Below, one piece after another: positions 1,752-28,735 of a DNA stretch of 32,000 bases; position 1 is the stretch's first letter, and the number at the start of each line of letters is the position of its first letter. A program made the translations under genes and the position numbers. Below the pieces are notes generated by a model. That model was given only the letters and a program-made list of their open reading frames with translations, searched no databases and had not been told where the DNA came from. This DNA comes from Bigelowiella natans nucleomorph (taxonomy: Eukaryota; Protista; Cercozoa). The stretch spans positions 90,001 to 122,000 of the forward strand of contig DQ158856.1 of assembly GCA_000002455.1 (NCBI GenBank), in the 5' to 3' direction.

Positions 1752-2243
1752 ATGATAAGTAATGATACATTTATCAGTAGATATATAAGTTTCAGATATC
1801 AAAATAACGAAAAATATAATAAGACGCGCCTGACAAATTTCGAACCAGCTAGAATATTAAAATATAATATGAATAATTTTTTTACTTTAAAGAATAAATA
1901 TACCAGTAATTTTTCAGCTACGAAAAATAAATCAGCTGTTAGATCAAGATTTTTCTTAAATTATTTATGTTTTTATTTAAGCATTATATATATGAATAGT
2001 CCATTCTCAATAGTTTACAAAATAATTTATAAACAACTATACTTATCCAAACATGTATCATCATATTTAACAATAAAACTAAGTAAATTTCAAGGGAATT
2101 TCTATTATTTCAATCAAATATTAAATTTTTATATCAATAATTTTCTCAATTTTAATAAAACTTGTTCAATAAATGTTTTATCTTTTAATCATATCAAGAA
2201 AATAAACTTTATATTAAAAACCGAGCTACTAAATTTTCTTTGA
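1752..2243 (+). CDS. Hypothetical 163-aa orphan protein
   Basis: Open 163-codon frame filling the gap between hsp90 and BUD31. Rich in N/K/I/F/Y, with no motif recognised. Confidence 0.5.
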   Translation: MISNDTFISRYISFRYQNNEKYNKTRLTNFEPARILKYNMNNFFTLKNKYTSNFSATKNKSAVRSRFFLNYLCFYLSIIYMNSPFSIVYKIIYKQLYLSKHVSSYLTIKLSKFQGNFYYFNQILNFYINNFLNFNKTCSINVLSFNHIKKINFILKTELLNFL

Positions 2244-3474: not shown

Positions 3475-5242
3475 CTAGTGGCTTAAGATAATTATGATTT
3501 TTAAAATAATTGTATTCATTCTTATTAGTAATTTTTTTGATCTAGAGTAATACTTAATCAACCGATTATCAGTAATACTTATTTGATTGCTAAAAAAACT
3601 CTTACTATTCTTTAATCTCTGCCTCTTGTTTCCTTTATAAAGCTCTAGATATGAAAAAAGATGCTTTTCTAAATTTTAAAATAGTACTCTTCAATGAGCT
3701 ATAAACTTTAAGTTCAGTTCGAAAATTGTACTGGATATACACAATACCATACATTTCTTTTTGAAAAATCTGATTTTCTATTTATAACTTGTATAGCTTT
3801 TTTACTTTTATTACAAAAGAAGTATTCAACACAAGTAAAGTTTCTTCGACGATTCTTAAGCAAATTAAATAGCCTTTGGGCACCTTTTTGAGTGATATGA
3901 ACAAAATTTACGATTTTTAGATTTAATTTAATCAGATCTTCAATTATCTGATTCTTAGATGGGTGACAATAAAAAAATACTTTGGAAGCTTTGATTTTAT
4001 TTTTATTTCCTGAAGATTTTCCGAAAATTACAATAGGTTTCATGTTGATAATACTACTAACCGTAAACTAAAAAACTCATTTTAACTTTTTGATAGAACT
4101 CTGTCAAAATGAATAAATATTTATTCCTATTAGAAGCTAGCAAAGATGGAAGTTGTGATTTAAGATTAAAAAAATCAGGACTTGTGATTATAACGTGAGA
4201 ATCTGTGTGTAAAGTGTCCACAAGAGATTTTGAAGTCTTAACAATTTGATATATATTTTCATCAAAACCATAGTTTTTCTATTTTAAAATTAATAAACAT
4301 TTATAATTTCTGAATTGAAATAATTTATTAACTTTCTTGAATTATTTTTTAAATCATTTAATTTGTGATTGATTATTATTACTTTAACTTTTTTTTTATT
4401 AATTGACATGAATTTGAACAGTATCAATAAAATGTTCTAATATTTTTATATTTACCAACAAATTAATAAAGGAGGATACAGGAAATACTATCGTACATTT
4501 TTTTTTATAAACAGAGTTCGAAATTTTTCTATACAAAAATCTTTCATTTCGTTTACCATCTAAATAATTTTTTGCTCCTATGGTATCTTCAATAATCAAC
4601 AGATCAAAATTAAAGTCATAATAGGAAACTCCTTTTAAAACTAAACTATCATTTTTTGAATAATCCCCTGTATATAACAAACTAAAAGATAAGGAATTGA
4701 GATTAATGCAGCTAGATCCTAATGAATGGCCAGAGTTAAAAAACGTAGCTATCTATTTTTCATTAAAATACGTTATTGCCACGCAGCATTTTTACAGTAT
4801 TTTCTTTTACAGATATTATTAATTCCATGACCATTTCAATATCATCTTGATTAAAGCTTTTAATTTTTAATTTATCAGTAAAGTTCAGAAATTCTTTAGA
4901 ATTATAAAAGAATAATAGCTTGGTCAAATAAGTCGAATAAGATAAGTTCTTTAATAAAAAAAATACCTTGTCACTGCCATAATTTAAAATTAAAGGTAAG
5001 CTTCCAATATGATCTAAATGATAATGACTAATTAGAAAATTTAATGGTTTAGTTATCTTTTTTAAGAAATTTATGCTCTCTAAATGCATCCAATACTTAT
5101 CGCTTCTAATAATACCAATATCAAGAATAAATATTGTATTTCTTTTTTAATTTATCAACTTTATCATTACATAAATACACGAATTTCCAATTTGAAAAGT
5201 TCCGCCCAGTTGTAGTATCTTAACAATTGAATCACTAACCAT
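3475..5242 (-). CDS. cpsf73: CPSF73/Ysh1-like metallo-beta-lactamase/beta-CASP 3'-end endonuclease
   Basis: LGGTFQIGNSC, ISHYHLDHIGSLP (HxHxDH), FNSGHSLGS, LYTGDYS, FYCHPS..FVHITQKGAQRL (compare FSAHTD..LVHGEQNEMARL). Several 19-nt introns. Stop traced to 3475. IntS11 is less likely. Confidence 0.82.
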
Positions 5243-5508: not shown

Positions 5509-7848
5509 ATGATATTAAATACTCCAAAAAAACTTAACATTACTAATAGAAACTCAATTGATACGGCTTATTGCTTTTCACTCTTATCTAATTATACATA
5601 TACCAAAAAATATTATTTATTATTTGAAAATAAATTTATTAAAAGCAATGAGATAGAACTCAATTTATTTATAAGAAATTATTCCTTAAACTATTTTTCA
5701 AAAAACTCAGAAATGAAAGTAAAAATTGAATATTTTAGAATAATATTCTTATATTTAAAAATAAATTAATAGAACTATCGAAAATAAGACTAATATCCGG
5801 CTATTCAGATACAGTTTCATCTCTTTTTTATTATCATTATAAGATAGGAAAAGACTCAAATTTGATTTTGCTTTATTATTTGAAACATCTTTCTCTTGAT
5901 AAATTAAGTTTACTATGTTTTAAAACAAAATTTCTTAAAAATTCCACCAACTATTTTATCACCATGATAATTGCTAACTATAAACAAGTTTGCACCTAAT
6001 TAATAGTACAGTTGCAGGTATTCGATTGGAAGAATAAAAAATACTTTAGAAAATATATCATTACATATGCTTACATGCTACAAAACATTCAGCAAATCAA
6101 AATTTTTTTATATGCATTTGGTAAATAATTTTATACTAGCTTACTAATCTTTTCAAACCCCATTTAATTGGTAAATTATCTAAAAAAAAATACAATAGGA
6201 TTAATGCTAAATTTATTCATTCCTCGGAAAGCACAAATTTAGCTTTTATTGTTGTTCTATTTAAAATATGTTGTTCATTTAGAAATAATATTGAAAATAG
6301 AATATATCTTATACAAAAAATTTTTCTAGTAATAGAACTAATGAGTAATAAAACCAATTACCATGTGGGTAAAAAAATCCTTAAGTTTTCTTCTTTTGGG
6401 TACCAGACTACACAATTGTTGTTACGCATTTTTGAACTGTTCCTTTTAAACAAAAGTAATAAAAATTTAAAATATTTTAGCAATCATTTAGGTTTGTTTT
6501 AAATTTATAGACTATTTAAGTCGTATTTTTCTTTATAAAAAAAGAGAAATTTATTATAAAAAATACTATTCTTATTTACAATCAGAAAAAAATATTAATA
6601 CATTCTTCCTCTGGACATTTAGAAAAGAAAAATTTTCTACTGCCAACAGATCTAAATTATTTTTTGATTTTATTGATTACAATAACTCCAATACTCTACA
6701 AAAAAATAGATTATACAAAATATTATTACTAGAAGCTGTTGATGAATACAAAAGCTATGAAAAAAGCATCAGAATAAAAATTATTTTAGACTTTTTAAAA
6801 GTAGTTTATTTATTATTAGAACATCAACCTTAAAGAGAATTTTTTATTCATGTTTATCGAACTAAGCCTAATTTATCTACAGATCAATAAAAAAAATACA
6901 ATATTAAAAATAGTTCTATTAATTTCAAAAATGCTTAAGTCAAGCTTTAGAATTAATACTTTTGATATACATAAAAATTTTAAGCATCAATATTTTTTAA
7001 GACAGTTTAATTTAGAAAAGTACTTTTTAAATGCAAAATTTTTCAATATAATTTTAGACTTGTTAGAGGATATATATGATCATAAGAAACTCATTCTATT
7101 TTATGAAAGTATTCTGAACAGCAAATATTTTACGATCGAATTACTTTTTTCTTACTCAAATATACTTAAGGTATATTTTATTGTTATAGCGATCTAATCA
7201 GCTTGATCAAAGTATTAAAATTAGATTTATACATCGCTCTAAAATTCCTGAAAACAGAAGAATAGATTTCTGGTTTTCCTTTTTAATGGATATGTCTTTA
7301 ATGACGATTAAAAAGCAGGAACTTAACGAATATCTTATTTCAAATGTTTTATTTTCACTATTAGATTCTAGAAGAAAATAATAAAACTATAATAGAATTT
7401 TTGTTCATAGTTTGTAACTCTCTTATATTTAATATTTATACCAAAAGGATAAATATCAAAATTTATTCTATACTCAAGGATATACCTACTAATAAAAAAA
7501 TTGATTTTCATATTTTTCTATATTCTTTATCGAATATTGGAAAAAAATTAGGCATTATTGAAGTTTTTTTTAATAAAATAGCTGTTAAGTTTGGTCAATA
7601 CGTACTGGAAGTCAAAAAATATACAAATTATAAAAGAAAAAGAATTTATTAAGCTATCATTATTAACCATTTTTATTAAAGAAAGCCTAGGAAATTACTC
7701 ACATTGTAAAAAGTTGTATAAACAATTAATAAATAATATATCAGAAAAATATAAGTGTATTGTACTATCATCCTATAAAAATTTTGAAGTATCTCTCAAT
7801 TTTTTTAGATTTTACACGGGAATGAAGAATCTTATAGAGATTTTCTAA
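5509..7848 (+). CDS. HAT/TPR-repeat protein, probably SYF1/XAB2 (NTC splicing factor); multi-intron, start uncertain (about 5320-5509)
   Basis: LLEDIYDHKKLILFYESILNSKYFTIELLFSYSNIL resembles XAB2 DLEESLGTFQSTKAVYDRILDLRIATPQIVINYAMFL. The C-terminal ESLGNYSHCKKLY..SSYKNFE resembles ECKLGEIDRARAIY..QTWKDFE. Very divergent. Confidence 0.55.
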
Positions 7849-7925: not shown

Positions 7926-8438
7926 ATGGTTTAAATAATTTATAAAGATATTATCTAAAAAAGCAATTAAAGATAAAATAATTAACAGCGAAAAAACTAA
8001 ATACTATAAAGGTATAAACGTGAAAAAATATGATTTAAGCGATGAAAAATTTATACTATCTACTATGAATAATAGATCAAAAAGAAAGTATTTTGTTCTA
8101 GAATAGATTATATAGATATATGAAAACCAAAAAAAATCTAAAATCTAATCAGCATTTATTGCTCAACTTTTTTGATAAATTATTTAATAGGAAAACAAAT
8201 GACAAACTAAAAACTCATGTTAGAAATTGTATAATTACTCCTTCGATGATAAATAAAAAAATTTATGTATATAATGGAAATTCTTATAGCTACATTGAAC
8301 TTCAAGTTTATGATAGAATTTTAGACGCTAATGCTTGGCAAATTTCTAGGTGAATTTTCTTTAACTTACAAACCTGTAAAACATGGCAATCCAGGAATAG
8401 GTGCTACACATTCTTCAAGATTTATTCCTTTAAGATGA
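7926..8438 (+). CDS. rps15: 40S ribosomal protein S15 (uS19)
   Basis: [53 protein letters not shown]. 19-nt introns at 7929-7947, 8088-8106 and 8306-8324. Confidence 0.97.
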
Positions 8439-8488
8439 TGATCTAAGTATTAAACTTAATATTAATTACAATAAAATAATAAATATTG

Positions 8489-8990
8489 TTAGTATAACTC
8501 ATCTAATTGCCTTAACCAAGTTTTTCTTCGAGCTATATTTTCATTTCTAATATTATTTAAGTAAGGCTTTAGCACAAATTCCTTTTTAATTTTCGTTAAA
8601 ACTTGAACTATATAGAAAAATATTACCTTCTGGGGTTCTTATGCAATTAATAAGACATCTAACATTTTTTACAGGTATCCAATTATCTAATCCTGGGCCC
8701 CAAATAAAAGTATTCTGATCTATTATACCATTGATCCAGCAAATTCTCAACGTTTTTAAATCACAAGGTCCTCTTGATGTACTTAATCGATCTTTATAGT
8801 ACCAAATATTATCCTTTGAAATTGTTTTTATATACTGAAACTGTGACTTTTGATTTAAAGTAATTTTTTTATCAAACATTGTATTAATTTTATCTAAATA
8901 TATTTTTGTTCTCTCATCTTGATTTATTTTTTCTAAATATTCAATTACATTATGTTTTATAGTTTCCGTGATTTGATTGATATGATTCAT
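8489..8990 (-). CDS. tic56: GYF_2 (DUF4339) domain protein, Tic56-like plastid translocon subunit, 160 aa
   Basis: WYYKDRLSTSRGPCDLKTLRICWINGIIDQNTFIWGPGLDNWIPVKNV..IRTPE, then a 19-nt intron at 8608-8626, then VQVLTKIKKEFVLKPYLNNIRNE..*. Matches my recollection of the green-lineage Tic56 core (WYYKDRLGRTRGPC..GIIDKDTFIWGEDMDEW). Confidence 0.8.
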
Positions 8991-9026
8991 TAATTTGCGT
9001 AAAAATAAGTTTATTTTAAATAACTA

Positions 9027-10578
9027 CTAAATTACATCCATAGTCCTAGTTAGGTGTAAATTATATCTAAACATGTAGTCCCAAAGATCTGATGAGATTT
9101 TATCTTTTGATGAATTAATTAGAGTAATCGCTGTTCCTTTCTTGTTTAACCTACCAGTTCTACCTATACGGTTTATGTATTCTTCTAGAGAAGAAGGAAT
9201 ATCAAAGTTAATTACTAAATTAACATTTTTGAAATCTAGACCTCTACTAGCTAATGATGTCGAAACCAAAATAGAATTATTTTCGTTTCTAAAACTATAT
9301 AATGTTATCATTCTTTCTATTTGAGATTGGGTCCCAAATAAACTTTTTGATTTGTAACCTGCTTCAATAAGTAACTTATTAACTAATTGTGCGCTTTTTA
9401 TAGTATTCACAAAGACGATTACACTTCCTTTAACGTACCAGTAACTAATTATTTCTAGTAATCTTTGCTTTTTGAAAATTTCTATATATTCGAAAAATTG
9501 AGAAATATTTGAATTTATTTTTGATCTTTCACCCATATTAAAACGAATAGGATACTTTAGGAAAACTGAAAGGTTTATGATTTGCGATATCTATAAGGAT
9601 TTAAGATACTTTTAATCCCATACAAGAAGCAAAAAGCAGTAATTGTTTATCTCTACGAACGTTTTTTAATATCCTTTTTATTGATATTTCAAAATCAATA
9701 TCTAATATTTTATCAGCTTCGTCCATAATAATTTTTTTTATGTTCCATAAAGGTTTTTTTTTTATTAAAAGTATTAAATCTATTAATCTACCTGGAGTTG
9801 TAACTATAATATTATTTTCCTTAAATAGTGAATTAATTGAATTAGCTAAATTCGAACCTCCATAAAAACAAAAGGTTCTAATGTTTGAATGTTTGGTCAA
9901 ATAATATGATTCTCTGCCTATTTGTAATACCAATTCTCTTGTTGGAGCAATGACAATATTTCTAACATTTTTTAATCTATTCAAGCCTACTATAAGAGGA
10001 ATTAAATAACAAAGAGTTTTACCTGAGCCAGTTTTGGCTAAACAAAAAATATCTTTCCCAAACAATATTTTTGGAATCACAAGTGATTGTATTGGAAGTG
10101 GATATAGCCTACGTGTGTTTTTAAGATAGCTTAATACACTTTTGTGAATTTTTATAAAATTCCAATGCTGAAATAAATTAAAAAAAGAATTATTACTTGA
10201 AAGAATACGTTTATCCTCTGTTTCTATTTTTGTTATTTTTAAATTTTTACATATCTTACTAAATGTATCGTATCCATTTAAAAATTTATGTATCAAACCG
10301 ATTAATACAAGAGGCTTTTTTTTTTCAATACTCTTATTAAAGATATATTTAACTTTGTCAGGATAAACAGTTTTAGTCTTGTGATTGGTATTAAAATTAT
10401 TATAAAATTGTGAAATGTTTGCTATAATTTTTGCTTTTTTTATTTTTTTAAACACTTTGTAATCATATTTATTCTTATTATTGGTTTCACTCGACAAAAT
10501 TTTATTATTCGAATCGAATTTATTAATTGGTCTATCAAAATTATTATTATATGACTTAGAATGTAACATATCAGTCAT
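9027..10578 (-). CDS. prp5: DEAD-box helicase PRP5/DDX46-like
   Basis: AKTGSGKT, PTRELVLQ, TPGRLID, DEAD, NVRRDKQ, GERSKINSNISQ and RLLEIISYWYVKGSVIVFV (typical of DDX46/RH42), RGLD, NRIGRTGR. A 19-nt intron at 9591-9609 joins the two ORFs in frame. Confidence 0.8.
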
Positions 10579-24299: not shown

Positions 24300-26189
24300 A
24301 TAATTAAATTATCCAAAATCTAGCTTACCCTATAGTTTCGATAAATTTTATAAGATTATGAACTAAAGATCAAATATCCTATTTTAAAGATTATAGTCTA
24401 TTTAATGACTGATTACTAAGAGAAAATTAAACCACAAGTCTAAGAGTCAAATTTACTAAACTACATGTTACTTTTAAAACTTTTTAATTCTAGACTAAAA
24501 TTTATCTATGAATCATTCGTACTCAAATAAACCTGTATTATTTAATTTAGATTGTTTCAAAAAATTAATTGATTCTAAAATAATGGTTATTTTATCTTAA
24601 AACAGAAAATTATTTCTAATAATCTAGGACAAGTTAATAACAAATTCTATATTTTAATTAAACAGAAAAGTATTTTTAAAAATATAGAAATCTTACTTAG
24701 TCAAAATATACTTTCAATACTAATGGAATTAAACAAATTTCTCCCTTTCACTAAAGTAAAAAATAAAGCAAAGTTAATAAATAAAAAATTAACGTTATCT
24801 ATTCAACAATCTAACTTGAATATAGCTTACTTATTAATATTTGGTATACTAATTTGTATTTAGTTTCAAAAATGTCTTTGCTTTTTAGATCTAAATCACT
24901 TTTGTCACAAAAGAAAATACTTAACCCTTTAAGAAAAAGTATAATTCTAATTACAATAAATATGAGACTTATTAGTTTAAAACTAAAATTTATTGATAAA
25001 GATTTCATCATAAAATTAATTAAAACTTCTCTAATTGGAAAACTTTCTCAAAATCATAATTTTATTAGCAACTCTGTATCATTTTCATAGAATAGTTAAA
25101 ATTAATTGACTTCATAATAAATCGTATTAAGTATTACAAAAACAAAACTAACATTAAAAATATTTTTAGGAATGTCTTTTTTTCAAAATATAAAAACTGG
25201 TATTCTCATAATAGCTTTTTTATTTCTAAAGGATTATTATTTCAAAAGTATTCGAATCATATTAATTTCAAAAGGACTAGCAAGTCTAATCCTAGTATAA
25301 TTATTATACCTACCTCGTTGATCAACAAAAAGGACTCTAAATTTAAAGATTCATCCATAAAATATTGCAACAAGTATAAGATAAATCAAAAAGGCAATTT
25401 TACCACAGACTAGAAACAAGATACCAGTTTATATTACAAACGATTAAAAATACTAATGCTGATCTTATACTACTTGATCAAAAAGACACTATAATTACTG
25501 ATCTAATGAATAAATATACTAAATCAACAATAATAAACAATTTTTATTCATCAGAACTTTTCAATATAATCAATAACCTAGGCTTTGAAAAAAATAAAAG
25601 CTCCTATTTTTATCATAATTTTAACTCTTCAAAATATTTTAGATTAAATGTTTTTAAGATTTGAATAAGATTTGTAATTCCAATTTTATTAGCTGGTTAT
25701 TAATCACAAACAAATCAACAAAAAGAAGATGCTTGTCGATTATTTGCACCTTTACTGATTATCAATTCGAAAAAGATCTACTAAATGATACGAGAAATTT
25801 AATAGTTTTAATAATTCAAATATTGATTGATGGAAGAGTTCTACCTTCGGATAACTCAGTCGAATTCTTGATAACGAAGATGATCAAATATAAAATTCAA
25901 CTTACCGAATGTACTATTTTTGCAATTAGTAAGAGATATTATAGTTAAATCTTTCTACTATTTAATTTATATTATGAATCACAAAAAAAAAGTAATATCT
26001 TTTCCTAACAATAATTCCATTTTAAAAATAAACTTTGAACGAGATAAAACAATAGATTTGCGGAATTTGAAAGATCACCATAAAAACATTAATTATATTC
26101 ATTTAAATTATAAAGTATGTAGTACTTAAAATTAGATGAATTTAATCTTATCAAGCTTTTTACTTTTTCACGATATTTCAAATATGTAA
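24300..26189 (+). CDS. Highly divergent CCT/TCP-1 chaperonin subunit, most like gamma; boundaries approximate
   Basis: NPSIIIIPTSLINKK resembles NPRIVLLDSSLEYKK. RNLIVLIIQILIDGRVLPSDNSVEF resembles RNLQDAMQVCRNVLLDPQLVPGGGASEM. The length fits a CCT subunit. Confidence 0.55.
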
Positions 26190-26218: not shown

Positions 26219-28735
26219 CTAGTAATAAAACATAATCTGCCTAATAACCTCTAAATAGATTTTTAAATAAACCGAATTAAGAAACAAAATCTCATTTTTA
26301 AATGTTCTTTTAGATTTTATAAATGATAAGTACTTTTCTGTAAATAAATTTTTGATTTCGCAATAATTTTTGTCGTTTATCAATAAAATGTTTAAAATCT
26401 TACCAGCTATTAAGATTGTAATACTTTTTAGTGATATTTTTTTTTCATCTATAACTTTATTCAAAAAGTATAAAGATTTTCTTAATAGAAATAGATTGAA
26501 TGTGGTTTTCTTAAAATCCCTATAGCAATATTTTTTCTTATCATTTTTATAATTATAAGTTTTTATCCGTAACCTTCCCATCTATAACTATTTGCTACAG
26601 TAATTATTATTAAAAAGTTGAAATCTAGAACATCTTTATTTTAAGTTAACTATTAATTATTATTATTCTTTTAAAAAAACTAACCACTCTTTTAAAAATG
26701 GAGATAAAACTGAAATAATAGGAATAGCATCCCCTAATAATTTATCAAAAACTAAATATTTTATTTGATTGCTATTATTTTAGTTTATACTTCCTAAGAG
26801 TAGAATATCTATGAACCTTGACTAACAAGCATCCAAAAACCGTACAATACAATGTTTTTATTCTGAGTGCGGTAAATATAAAAGATGCCAAGAAAATAGT
26901 AAAGTTGAATATTGAAACATTATTCGTATAATGGAGAGTAATATTGTTTTTTGTTAAAACTGATTTTACTAATTTAAATAATTTGAATTGTTCTCTATAA
27001 TGTCTATTCTATTATTCAAAAACTTTATTGAAATACCAATTTTTTGTAGAAAATAATATTTGATTGTTAATGGCATTCTCATAAGGTATAAATTTAATTT
27101 TTGAATAAGGTAAGGATCACCGTAGATACAGTTATTTTTTCCTGAAATACATTTTTTAATTCTACTCATACTTTATTATTAAATCATACTTTATTATTGT
27201 ATTTTTAGATATTACAGAGACAAAAGATATGTAAGAAATACAGTTATACGAGCATCTATTATACAATGCTTCAATGATTATTTTTCCATACTTTAAATCA
27301 ACAGGTAAAAACAAAATAACTTTACCAAGATTCGTAATTTCTAAAGAATTTACATCGATACAATTATAATAATATAAAATTTCTAGACTTCTAGTTTTTA
27401 GAATTTATACCTTCTTAGTTTTTCTTTATCTAAATAAAATCCCAGCTCGATACTTCCAATAAAATTAGATCCAATCAGCTTAATAAATAAAATGAAGGAA
27501 TTTATATTTTCAGTAACAATATTAGGAATCAATTGTAATCCATTACACAGGTGGCTTCGTTTATCAAAAAGTCTAAATATAACACCTTTTCCAATTCTAC
27601 CTGTCAATAGTTAAATTACCGATTCTACCTAACCTTTGAACAGACTGTAATTTGGAACACGTTATTATTCTTAGCGTATTCGTTTGATATCGATCATTAT
27701 AAATATTTAATTTACTATATCCCGGATCAACCACAAATTTAAGATTTTTAATTGTTAAAGAAGTTTCAGAAATATTAGTACTCAAGTATAATTTTCTGTC
27801 GGGAGACAGAGAAGAATTTAAATTAATTTTATTGCTTTTGATTGTGCTATTATCATTATAACTTAGTATTTCGGAATATAATGACACGAGTTTGAGACTA
27901 GATTTTGTACGTCTAAAAATATTTAACGATTTAATAAATAATTTGAGCAGGATAATTTCATTTTTTCCAGTTAAAAATAACAATATATCCCCAGCAATAG
28001 TCTTTGTATTGATCTTTTTATAAACTTTTACCTTAAAAATAGTAATTAATGCAGCTATTAGATAATTTGAAATATTTTTATTTAAGAAAAAAATTTTTCT
28101 ATCATAAAATAACCCTTTTATAAAAATTATATTCGAATAAAATTGCTTTTTCAATAAATTTGGTTTGCTAAAAGTAGCGGTCATTATGAGAAACTTTAGT
28201 CCCTTTTTTTTTTTTACCTTTGTAATATAAAATTACTTGTAAAATATGGCATATTCCTATTATTATATCTGAATAAACTGATCTTTCATGAAATTCATCA
28301 ATAATCACGATCTATCTAGGATAATAAAACCATTTTCCCGAGAGTGTTATTCATAGTCAATAACATATTTAACAATATACCTTCTGTTAATAACATAATA
28401 TCTGATTTATTTGACGCTAAACTAAAGAAACGCATTTTCATACCAACCTGTTTAATTANNCATACTTTATGACCCAGCCTAGTTTTAAGAATAGTTGATA
28501 TTCTGAGGGCTACATTCAACACAGCTAATCTCCTAGGTTGCGTGATGAAAAGTTTATATTTTTTTTTACTAAAAAAAAAATATAAAATAATCGGAATAAT
28601 AGTTGATTTACCACAACCAGTTTCTCCTACAATTACAGAAAAGTCATTAAACAAAATTTTCCTTAGTATTATTTCTTTAAAGTAGACTAAGCTATTTTTA
28701 GGATTAATTATAGAAAAAAGTAAAACCGATCTCAT
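26219..28735 (-). CDS. DEAH-box splicing helicase (Prp2/16/22/43 family), multi-intron
   Basis: VGETGCGKST, TQPRRLAV, IIDEFHERS, MTAT, STNISETSLTI, VVDPG, QRLGRIGR. Two Ns at 28459-28460 fall in a probable intron. Confidence 0.9.

What the first reader, a model, noticed from the sequence alone, without database searches (positions are those of the whole stretch)
8489..8990. Probable Tic56 in a nucleomorph: a green Ycf1/Tic214-type TIC translocon may persist in a secondary plastid
Seen: after splicing one 19-nt intron, a 160-aa protein that is unusually well conserved for this genome, with WYYKDR..RGPC..GIID.NTFIWG.GL..W.P.KNV..RTPEV..LKP.LN.IR. Known: this GYF_2 core characterises Tic56 of the 1-MDa TIC complex (Tic20, Tic56, Tic100, Tic214/Ycf1). 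Chlorarachniophyte nucleomorphs encode Toc75 and Tic20, and their plastids carry ycf1. Inference: the green TOC-TIC supercomplex is still partly encoded by the relic endosymbiont nucleus, in a minimal form. As far as I recall, Tic56 is not in the usual list of nucleomorph plastid-protein genes, so it may be annotated as hypothetical. The charged N-terminus does not look like a stromal transit peptide, which fits an intermembrane-space subunit.
Basis: partly seen in the sequence, partly recalled or inferred. Interest (0 to 1): 0.9.

Follow-up and report, generated by a model that had tools for sequence, protein, structure and literature searches.

The report
Mislabelled Tic56 gene in a nucleomorph
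A gene in the leftover nucleus of an engulfed green alga, catalogued for years as an 'RNA binding protein', is the chloroplast import subunit Tic56, which suggests that this borrowed chloroplast still uses the green-plant type of protein import gate.

Summary
Confirmed. The window is Bigelowiella natans nucleomorph DNA. The minus-strand gene (two exons, 19-nt GT-AG intron, 160 aa) equals GenBank ABA27214.1, annotated 'RNA binding protein', not hypothetical. It is a Tic56 ortholog. Exon 1 hits only Chlamydomonas and Arabidopsis Tic56 strongly in the PDB (1e-22, 2e-15), and exon 2 follows in register. The Lotharella ortholog aligns ungapped over 110 residues (1e-35) and folds like Tic56 (TM 0.75). 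The intron position is shared with green algal Tic56 genes. Orthologs occur in all four species with sequenced nucleomorphs, under purifying selection where tested. Tic56 is absent from the published list of 17 plastid genes, so it would be the eighteenth; no paper in the library reports it. With nucleomorph Tic20 and Toc75 and plastid Ycf1 (literature), a Ycf1/Tic214-type TIC is the best explanation, but this is inferred. Tic100 was not found, Toc34/Toc159 are reported missing, and localisation is untested. The short form is mostly inherited, since many free-living chlorophytes have equally short Tic56. Verdict: new member of a known family, a useful re-annotation.

The parts
8627..8990 (-). 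Exon 1 of tic56 (residues 1-121 plus first base of codon 122)
   Evidence: ORF list; identical to ABA27214.1 residues 1-121; PDB hit to Chlamydomonas Tic56 129-203, E 1.2e-22
8608..8626 (-). 19-nt phase-1 GT-AG spliceosomal intron, at a position shared with green algal Tic56 genes
   Evidence: Absent from transcript L012; same codon and phase in L. oceanica (20 nt), L004 (20 nt), L077 (19 nt), Haematococcus (301 nt), Prototheca (113 nt)
8489..8607 (-). Exon 2 (rest of codon 122, residues 123-160, stop TAA): C-terminal helix of the Tic56 domain
   Evidence: Identical to ABA27214.1 residues 123-160; weak but exactly in-register match to Chlamydomonas Tic56 208-230, E 0.45; green-alga-only profile positions 90-124
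8658..8804 (-). Pfam GYF_2 core (residues 63-111) inside the Tic56 domain
   Evidence: PF14237 E 9.6e-12, 44.9 bits against cut-off 25.8
8492..8858 (-). Region equivalent to the carboxy-proximal globular domain of Chlamydomonas Tic56 (P127-R244), residues 45-160, intron included in the span
   Evidence: Constant offset of 82 residues; domain definition from bioRxiv 10.1101/2022.11.20.517165
8871..8990 (-). Lineage-specific N-terminal extension (residues 1-40), predicted as two helices; not transit-peptide-like
   Evidence: S+T 0.10, D+E 0.17; most orthologs have only 4-10 residues here; helices 2-21 and 26-39 at pLDDT 60-80

Best explanation
The gene is the endosymbiont's own tic56, kept in the nucleomorph since the green algal nucleus was captured (shown by sequence, fold, tree, intron position and synteny). 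Inferred mechanism: the mRNA is spliced and translated in the periplastid compartment. The soluble protein, which has no cleavable transit peptide and no transmembrane segment, crosses only the third membrane (former chloroplast outer envelope, nucleomorph-encoded Toc75) and stays in the space between the two inner membranes. There its globular domain wedges against the membrane domain of plastid-encoded Ycf1/Tic214, as in the Chlamydomonas structure, and stabilises a Tic20-Ycf1 import channel in the innermost membrane. It is a structural subunit, not the pore. The complex is probably reduced relative to Chlamydomonas: the helix that binds the Tic100 C-terminus has no counterpart, and no Tic100 was identified here. 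Orthology about 0.98; function as a TIC subunit about 0.8.
For: PDB sequence search: exon 1 vs Chlamydomonas Tic56 E 1.2e-22, Arabidopsis TIC56 2.3e-15, next hit 0.039. L. oceanica ortholog ungapped 6-115 vs 123-232, E 1.5e-35. Fold: ortholog model pLDDT 90, Foldseek 7vcf_Q E 3.6e-13, TM 0.75, 46% identity; other GYF folds E above 1e-3, 11-24% identity; exon 1 model gives the same top three. A profile without chlorarachniophyte rows scores them 126-151 bits against at most 49 for other GYF_2 domains; in the tree they form a 100/98 clade within the Tic56 group. Distance from the WYY motif to the C-terminus is 94-98 aa, against 97-100 in nearly all chlorophyte Tic56. Shared intron. Orthologs in B. 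natans, L. oceanica, L. vacuolata, A. amoebiformis; synteny sf3a1-nop1-rpl9-eif1A-helicase-tic56 in the window, L003 and L078; pN/pS 0.17-0.39 uncorrected. [quoted passage not shown] Binding site of the domain: bioRxiv 10.1101/2022.11.20.517165.
Against: [quoted passage not shown] No Tic100, Tic12/13/35 or YlmG found among the ORFan exons that could be scanned (only a small part of the genome). B. natans YCF1 was called unalignable, so its Tic56-binding surface is unverified. Toc159 and Toc34 reported missing. No targeting signal, which equally allows residence in the periplastid compartment. A tree rooted on streptophyte TIC56 put the root inside the chlorarachniophytes, so the donor lineage is unresolved.
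Confidence: 0.8

Rival explanations
1. It is a true Tic56 ortholog but no longer works in a Ycf1-type channel; it is kept for a second role, such as plastid rRNA processing or ribosome assembly, while import runs through another Tic20 arrangement.
For: Arabidopsis tic56-1 has a 23S rRNA processing defect and a dual role has been proposed (PMC9790281); no Tic100 found; Ycf1 very divergent; plastid ftsH lost in chlorarachniophytes (PMC8763093).
Against: No stromal transit peptide: most orthologs start 4-10 residues before the domain. The translation defect was read as indirect in Chlamydomonas work (bioRxiv 10.1101/2020.07.04.188128). The part retained is exactly the domain that contacts Tic214, and ycf1 is still in the plastid genome.
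Confidence: 0.12
2. The current annotation is functionally right: the protein was repurposed as a GYF adaptor or RNA-binding factor of the nucleomorph or periplastid cytosol (splicing or RNA metabolism).
For: GenBank/UniRef name 'RNA binding protein' in four species; rnabp1 and rnabp2 are filed under RNA metabolism; GYF folds occur in Smy2, GIGYF and U5-52K; no targeting peptide; neighbours are housekeeping genes.
Against: No RRM, KH or other RNA-binding family in Pfam. Only 11-22% identity to those GYF proteins against 46% to Tic56. The Tic56-specific flanking helices and C-terminal end are conserved too, which a repurposed GYF core would not need. Gene neighbourhood carries no functional meaning in nucleomorphs (own knowledge).
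Confidence: 0.05
3. It is not Tic56 but another GYF_2 protein (RME-8/DNAJC13-like, ATXR3-like or bacterial GltJ-like) that resembles it.
For: Pfam names only GYF_2 and, below cut-off, GYF_ATXR3; multi-repeat GYF_2 proteins appear in the hit list.
Against: Bimodal scores (126-151 against at most 49 bits), tree separation of the other GYF_2 rows at 100/98, ungapped 110-residue alignment to Tic56, shared intron. RME-8 itself was not among the identified hits, so it was not compared directly.
Confidence: 0.02

Closest known systems
Chlamydomonas reinhardtii Tic56 (Cre17.g727100; PDB 7VCF chain Q, 7XZI chain F)
   Same: Whole carboxy-proximal globular domain in register without gaps, about 46% identity, same fold (TM 0.75), same end point; same intron position as chlorophyte genes (shown for Haematococcus and Prototheca).
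   Different: Lacks residues 1-122 including the helix 78-93 that binds Tic100; encoded in a nucleomorph and translated in the periplastid compartment of a four-membrane plastid.
Short Tic56 of core chlorophytes (Tetraselmis 150-154 aa, Coccomyxa 159-162, Trebouxia 165, Bryopsis 165, Myrmecia 128; unnamed in databases)
   Same: Same architecture and length: short N-terminal piece plus the domain, C-terminus 98-100 residues after the WYY motif.
   Different: Their N-terminal pieces are mostly 30-50 residues longer than those of Lotharella or Amorphochlora; none has been studied as far as I found.
Arabidopsis TIC56 (PDB 8Z9Y chain E)
   Same: Core motifs and fold; E 2.3e-15 by sequence, 2.1e-06 by Foldseek for exon 1.
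   Different: 527 aa with large N- and C-terminal additions; long branch in trees.
B. natans ABA27214.1 / XP_001712826.1 'RNA binding protein' and its orthologs AIB09996.1, BAS01609.1, A0A0H5BHL9
   Same: It is this gene; the exon structure was already annotated correctly.
   Different: The name is unsupported: no RNA-binding family is detected, and it is not counted among the 17 plastid-associated genes. That it is rnabp1 or rnabp2 of that list is my inference.
Other GYF and GYF_2 domains (Myxococcus GltJ/AgmX, Smy2, GIGYF1/2, CD2BP2)
   Same: Small shared GYF-type core of about 50 residues.
   Different: 11-24% identity, no flanking helices, E-values 9 or more orders weaker than Chlamydomonas Tic56 for the full-length ortholog.

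Membership tests
Tic56 | Best sequence match to characterised Tic56 proteins, beyond the generic GYF_2 core | tested here: met
   green-alga-only profile gives exon 1 E 1.5e-39 among 1830 nucleomorph segments, with exon 2 segments next
Tic56 | Full carboxy-proximal globular domain: N-helix, GYF_2 core, long C-terminal helix | tested here: met
   Model of ortholog P0007, pLDDT 90; Foldseek TM 0.75-0.76 to 7vcf_Q and 7xzi_F; exon 1 model
Tic56 | Groups with green Tic56 and apart from other GYF_2 proteins in a tree | tested here: met
   The sister lineage within green algae is unresolved
Tic56 | Soluble, without transmembrane segment | tested here: met
   Highest Kyte-Doolittle 19-residue mean 0.65 for exon 1 and 1.4-1.6 for orthologs
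Tic56 | Located in the envelope intermembrane space and bound to Tic214, Tic100 and Tic20 | not testable with these tools
   Needs localisation and co-purification; no multimer prediction and no Ycf1 sequence available
1-MDa TIC complex (Tic20, Tic56, Tic100, Tic214) | Tic20 and Tic214/Ycf1 genes present in the same organism | not tested
   Taken from papers only: tic20 and toc75, plastid YCF1; their sequences were not examined
1-MDa TIC complex (Tic20, Tic56, Tic100, Tic214) | Tic100 present | tested here: inconclusive
   No MORN or other TIC family among about 30 ORFan exons of the window, L001 and L003; most of the nucleomorph and the host nucleus were not searched
Long Chlamydomonas-type Tic56 | N-terminal helix 78-93 that binds the Tic100 C-terminal helix | tested here: not met
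   Alignment starts at Chlamydomonas residue 123; also absent or unalignable in many free-living chlorophytes, so it does not define the family
RNA-binding protein (current annotation) | A recognised RNA-binding domain (RRM, KH, zinc finger or similar) | tested here: not met
   Pfam scan of exon 1 gives only GYF_2; precomputed Pfam for full-length orthologs gives only PF14237

The most novel reading that the evidence does not exclude
Chlorarachniophyte plastids import proteins through a stripped green translocon of Toc75, Tic20, Tic56 and Ycf1, without Tic100, Toc34/Toc159 or a plastid-encoded Ycf2/FtsH motor. Envelope subunits such as Tic56 that lack a cleavable targeting peptide may be hard to re-route from the host nucleus, which would be one reason the nucleomorph persists. 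This would define the minimal working core of the disputed 1-MDa TIC.
Probability: 0.2. Interest if true: 0.82.

Novelty: new member of a known kind. Interest (0 to 1): 0.6.

Why it matters
The figure of 17 nucleomorph-encoded plastid proteins is repeated for all four sequenced chlorarachniophytes and is used to explain why the nucleomorph persists. This adds an eighteenth, and a third translocon subunit. It is, as far as the searched library shows, the first sign of a Tic214-type TIC component in a secondary plastid; in Euglena only three divergent Tic21 homologs were found. It gives the plastid ycf1 of these algae a likely partner and turns the open question of how proteins cross their inner two membranes into a testable pull-down. 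It remains a re-annotation that any current profile or fold search would deliver.

Tried and rejected
Each exon was searched by reference; the database copy P0008 served only as the target of two exon-wise comparisons, and full-length evidence comes from database proteins of other species or strains (P0007, P0003, P0001 and others). 2) Exon 2 alone is uninformative: best PDB hits are chance matches to cytochrome b5 reductase, and BLASTP against Haematococcus Tic56 found nothing. 3) The unspliced 134-aa ORF and the 25-nt alternative acceptor were rejected: transcript L012 and the annotated protein support 19 nt. 4) Pfam scans of ORFan exons for Tic100 and small subunits found nothing. 5) NCBIfam: only sub-threshold GltJ. 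6) Tree to find the green donor lineage failed: a very long streptophyte outgroup branch joined inside the chlorarachniophytes, which I take for an artefact. 7) No route to the chlorarachniophyte Ycf1 or to a Tic100 query sequence was available. 8) Three look-ups for key papers (Hirakawa 2012, and ids I recalled for de Vries 2015 and Gilson 2006) returned nothing. 9) InterPro/PANTHER tags could not be checked; an automatic TIC56 tag may already exist on the UniProt entries. No contig taken for human was met.

Full report
Observation. The region 8489-8990 holds a minus-strand gene: exon 1 from ATG 8990 to 8627, a 19-nt GT-AG intron 8626-8608, exon 2 from 8607 to the stop at 8489; 483 coding bases give 160 residues. 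It lies 36 nt downstream of a DEAD-box helicase gene and tail to tail with rps15, 50 nt away.

Identity of the source. A search with exon 1 returned seven close relatives. Their clusters hold ABA27214.1 / XP_001712826.1, 'RNA binding protein (nucleomorph) [Bigelowiella natans]', 160 aa, seen on a 140,590-bp contig. Exon 1 and exon 2 match it at 121/121 and 38/38. So the gene model is long known; only its name is at issue.

The splice is real. A short GT-AG pair is common by chance here (21% of GT sites), so independent evidence matters. Transcript contig L012 is 97-98% identical to the window and lacks exactly 19 nt at this point. The intron recurs at the same codon and phase in L. oceanica (20 nt), L004 (20 nt) and L077 (19 nt), and in the nuclear genes of Haematococcus (301 nt) and Prototheca (113 nt). 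Many other GC-rich, green-alga-like loci show the same G/GT donor after the matching motif. A shared intron position is evidence of orthology and of descent from the endosymbiont nucleus that does not depend on protein similarity.

It is Tic56. Against the PDB, exon 1 hits Chlamydomonas Tic56 (E 1.2e-22, residues 47-121 on 129-203) and Arabidopsis TIC56 (2.3e-15); the only other hit is the bacterial GltJ GYF domain at 0.039. Exon 2 alone is weak (E 0.45) but falls on 208-230, in exact register. The full-length L. oceanica ortholog aligns without gaps over residues 6-115 to 123-232 (E 1.5e-35). Its model (pLDDT 90) matches 7vcf_Q and 7xzi_F at TM 0.75-0.76 and 44-46% identity, with Smy2, GIGYF and GltJ at E above 1e-3; the exon 1 model gives the same top three. 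A profile built without chlorarachniophyte rows scores them 126-151 bits and other GYF_2 domains at most 49; in the tree they form a 100/98 clade inside the Tic56 group. Pfam GYF_2 alone would not have sufficed, since it also marks unrelated repeat proteins. A second tree meant to find the donor lineage failed: the long streptophyte branch joined inside the chlorarachniophytes.

Conservation. Orthologs named 'RNA binding protein' exist in L. oceanica, L. vacuolata and A. amoebiformis, that is, in all four species with sequenced nucleomorphs, and at least six further transcriptome or environmental relatives are known. Gene order sf3a1-nop1-rpl9-eif1A-helicase-tic56 is shared by the window, L003 and the A. 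amoebiformis transcript contig L078; Lotharella has rearranged it. The core is 73% identical to the L003 ortholog, more than fibrillarin or rpl9, with pN/pS 0.17-0.39 uncorrected and synonymous sites near saturation.

Anatomy. The conserved part equals the carboxy-proximal globular domain of Chlamydomonas Tic56 (P127-R244), which sits in the cleft between the Tic214 membrane domain and the Tic100 C-terminal domain; the helix 78-93 that binds Tic100 (bioRxiv 10.1101/2022.11.20.517165) has no counterpart. The 40 extra N-terminal residues of B. natans are acidic, poor in Ser/Thr and absent from most orthologs, which start 4-10 residues before the domain; there is no transmembrane segment. Shortness is not a nucleomorph invention: Tetraselmis, Coccomyxa, Trebouxia, Bryopsis and Myrmecia have 128-165 aa versions.

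Mechanism. Shown: an expressed, spliced, conserved Tic56 ortholog. [quoted passage not shown] Inferred: the protein is made in the periplastid compartment, crosses the third membrane only, and stabilises a Tic20-Ycf1 channel at the innermost membrane (confidence 0.8). Against a full Chlamydomonas-like supercomplex: Toc34 and Toc159 were not found in B. natans (PMC3542566 citing Hirakawa 2012), plastid ftsH was lost (PMC8763093; that green algal plastid ftsH is the Ycf2-like motor gene is my own knowledge), and my partial scan found no Tic100. Nucleomorph-encoded ClpC and DnaK are candidates for the motor (inference). Rivals are a Tic56 kept for a second role in rRNA processing (PMC9790281; 0.12), a repurposed GYF adaptor in the periplastid compartment (0.05) and a non-Tic56 paralog (0.02).

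Novelty. The published list has 17 plastid-associated genes without tic56, and files rnabp1 and rnabp2 under RNA metabolism; the same 17 are reported for four species (PMC4494063). Full-text searches pairing Tic56 with chlorarachniophyte, nucleomorph, Bigelowiella or secondary plastid returned only papers that mention the terms apart in the passages read; two listed reviews were not opened. The library omits most subscription journals, and automatic InterPro/PANTHER tags could not be checked, so novelty is probable, not certain.

Verdict. Observation confirmed; Tic56 identity secure; the translocon inference plausible but untested. New member of a known kind, interest 0.6.

Noticed in passing
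L012:1-1331 (window 8313-9681, minus strand): One spliced transcript spans the 3' part of the DEAD helicase gene and all of tic56 and runs on antisense into the 3' end of rps15; it also confirms a 19-nt intron in the helicase at window 9591-9609. L003 and L078 are multigene spliced contigs of 7-8 kb.
   Followed up: partly
proteins P0027, P0035, P0037 (marine metatranscriptome catalogue, no contig on record for P0037): Lys/Asn/Ile-rich Tic56 sequences that form their own 100/99 clade apart from the chlorarachniophytes. They might come from another reduced green nucleus, such as a dinoflagellate endosymbiont; source unknown.
   Followed up: partly
L006:1001-2768 and L008-L011: Tic56 lies tail to tail with lepA in Prototheca and in an unnamed compact green algal genome; a Tetraselmis Tic56 (P0294) is misnamed 'GTP-binding protein lepA' in UniRef.
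   Followed up: no
L001:8814-9911 (-) and L001:11008-11455 (+): ORFs of 333 and 136 aa flank tic56 in L. oceanica; their sizes match orf333 and orf136, listed as shared with B. natans. Exons scanned had no Pfam hit; they remain candidates for fold searches against small TOC-TIC subunits.
   Followed up: partly
window 6850-7848 (+): Intron-broken ORFan-like gene whose syntenic ortholog L003:5357-7402 has a weak HAT-repeat hit (PF23231, E 0.008): probably a prp6- or clf1-type splicing factor.
   Followed up: partly
window 1752-2243 (+), 3714-4043 (-), 24579-26126 (+), 26219-27598 (-): Nucleomorph ORFs without a convincing Pfam match; not identified.
   Followed up: partly
window 28316-28735 (-): The ORF of a DEAH-type helicase translates with two X residues, so the window holds ambiguous bases there; the stretch I read (28540-28660) did not include them.
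   Followed up: partly
databases: Most green algal Tic56 orthologs seen are named 'hypothetical' or 'GYF domain-containing protein'; among the algal rows only a Scenedesmus entry was called TIC56, which helps explain why the nucleomorph gene was missed.
   Followed up: no
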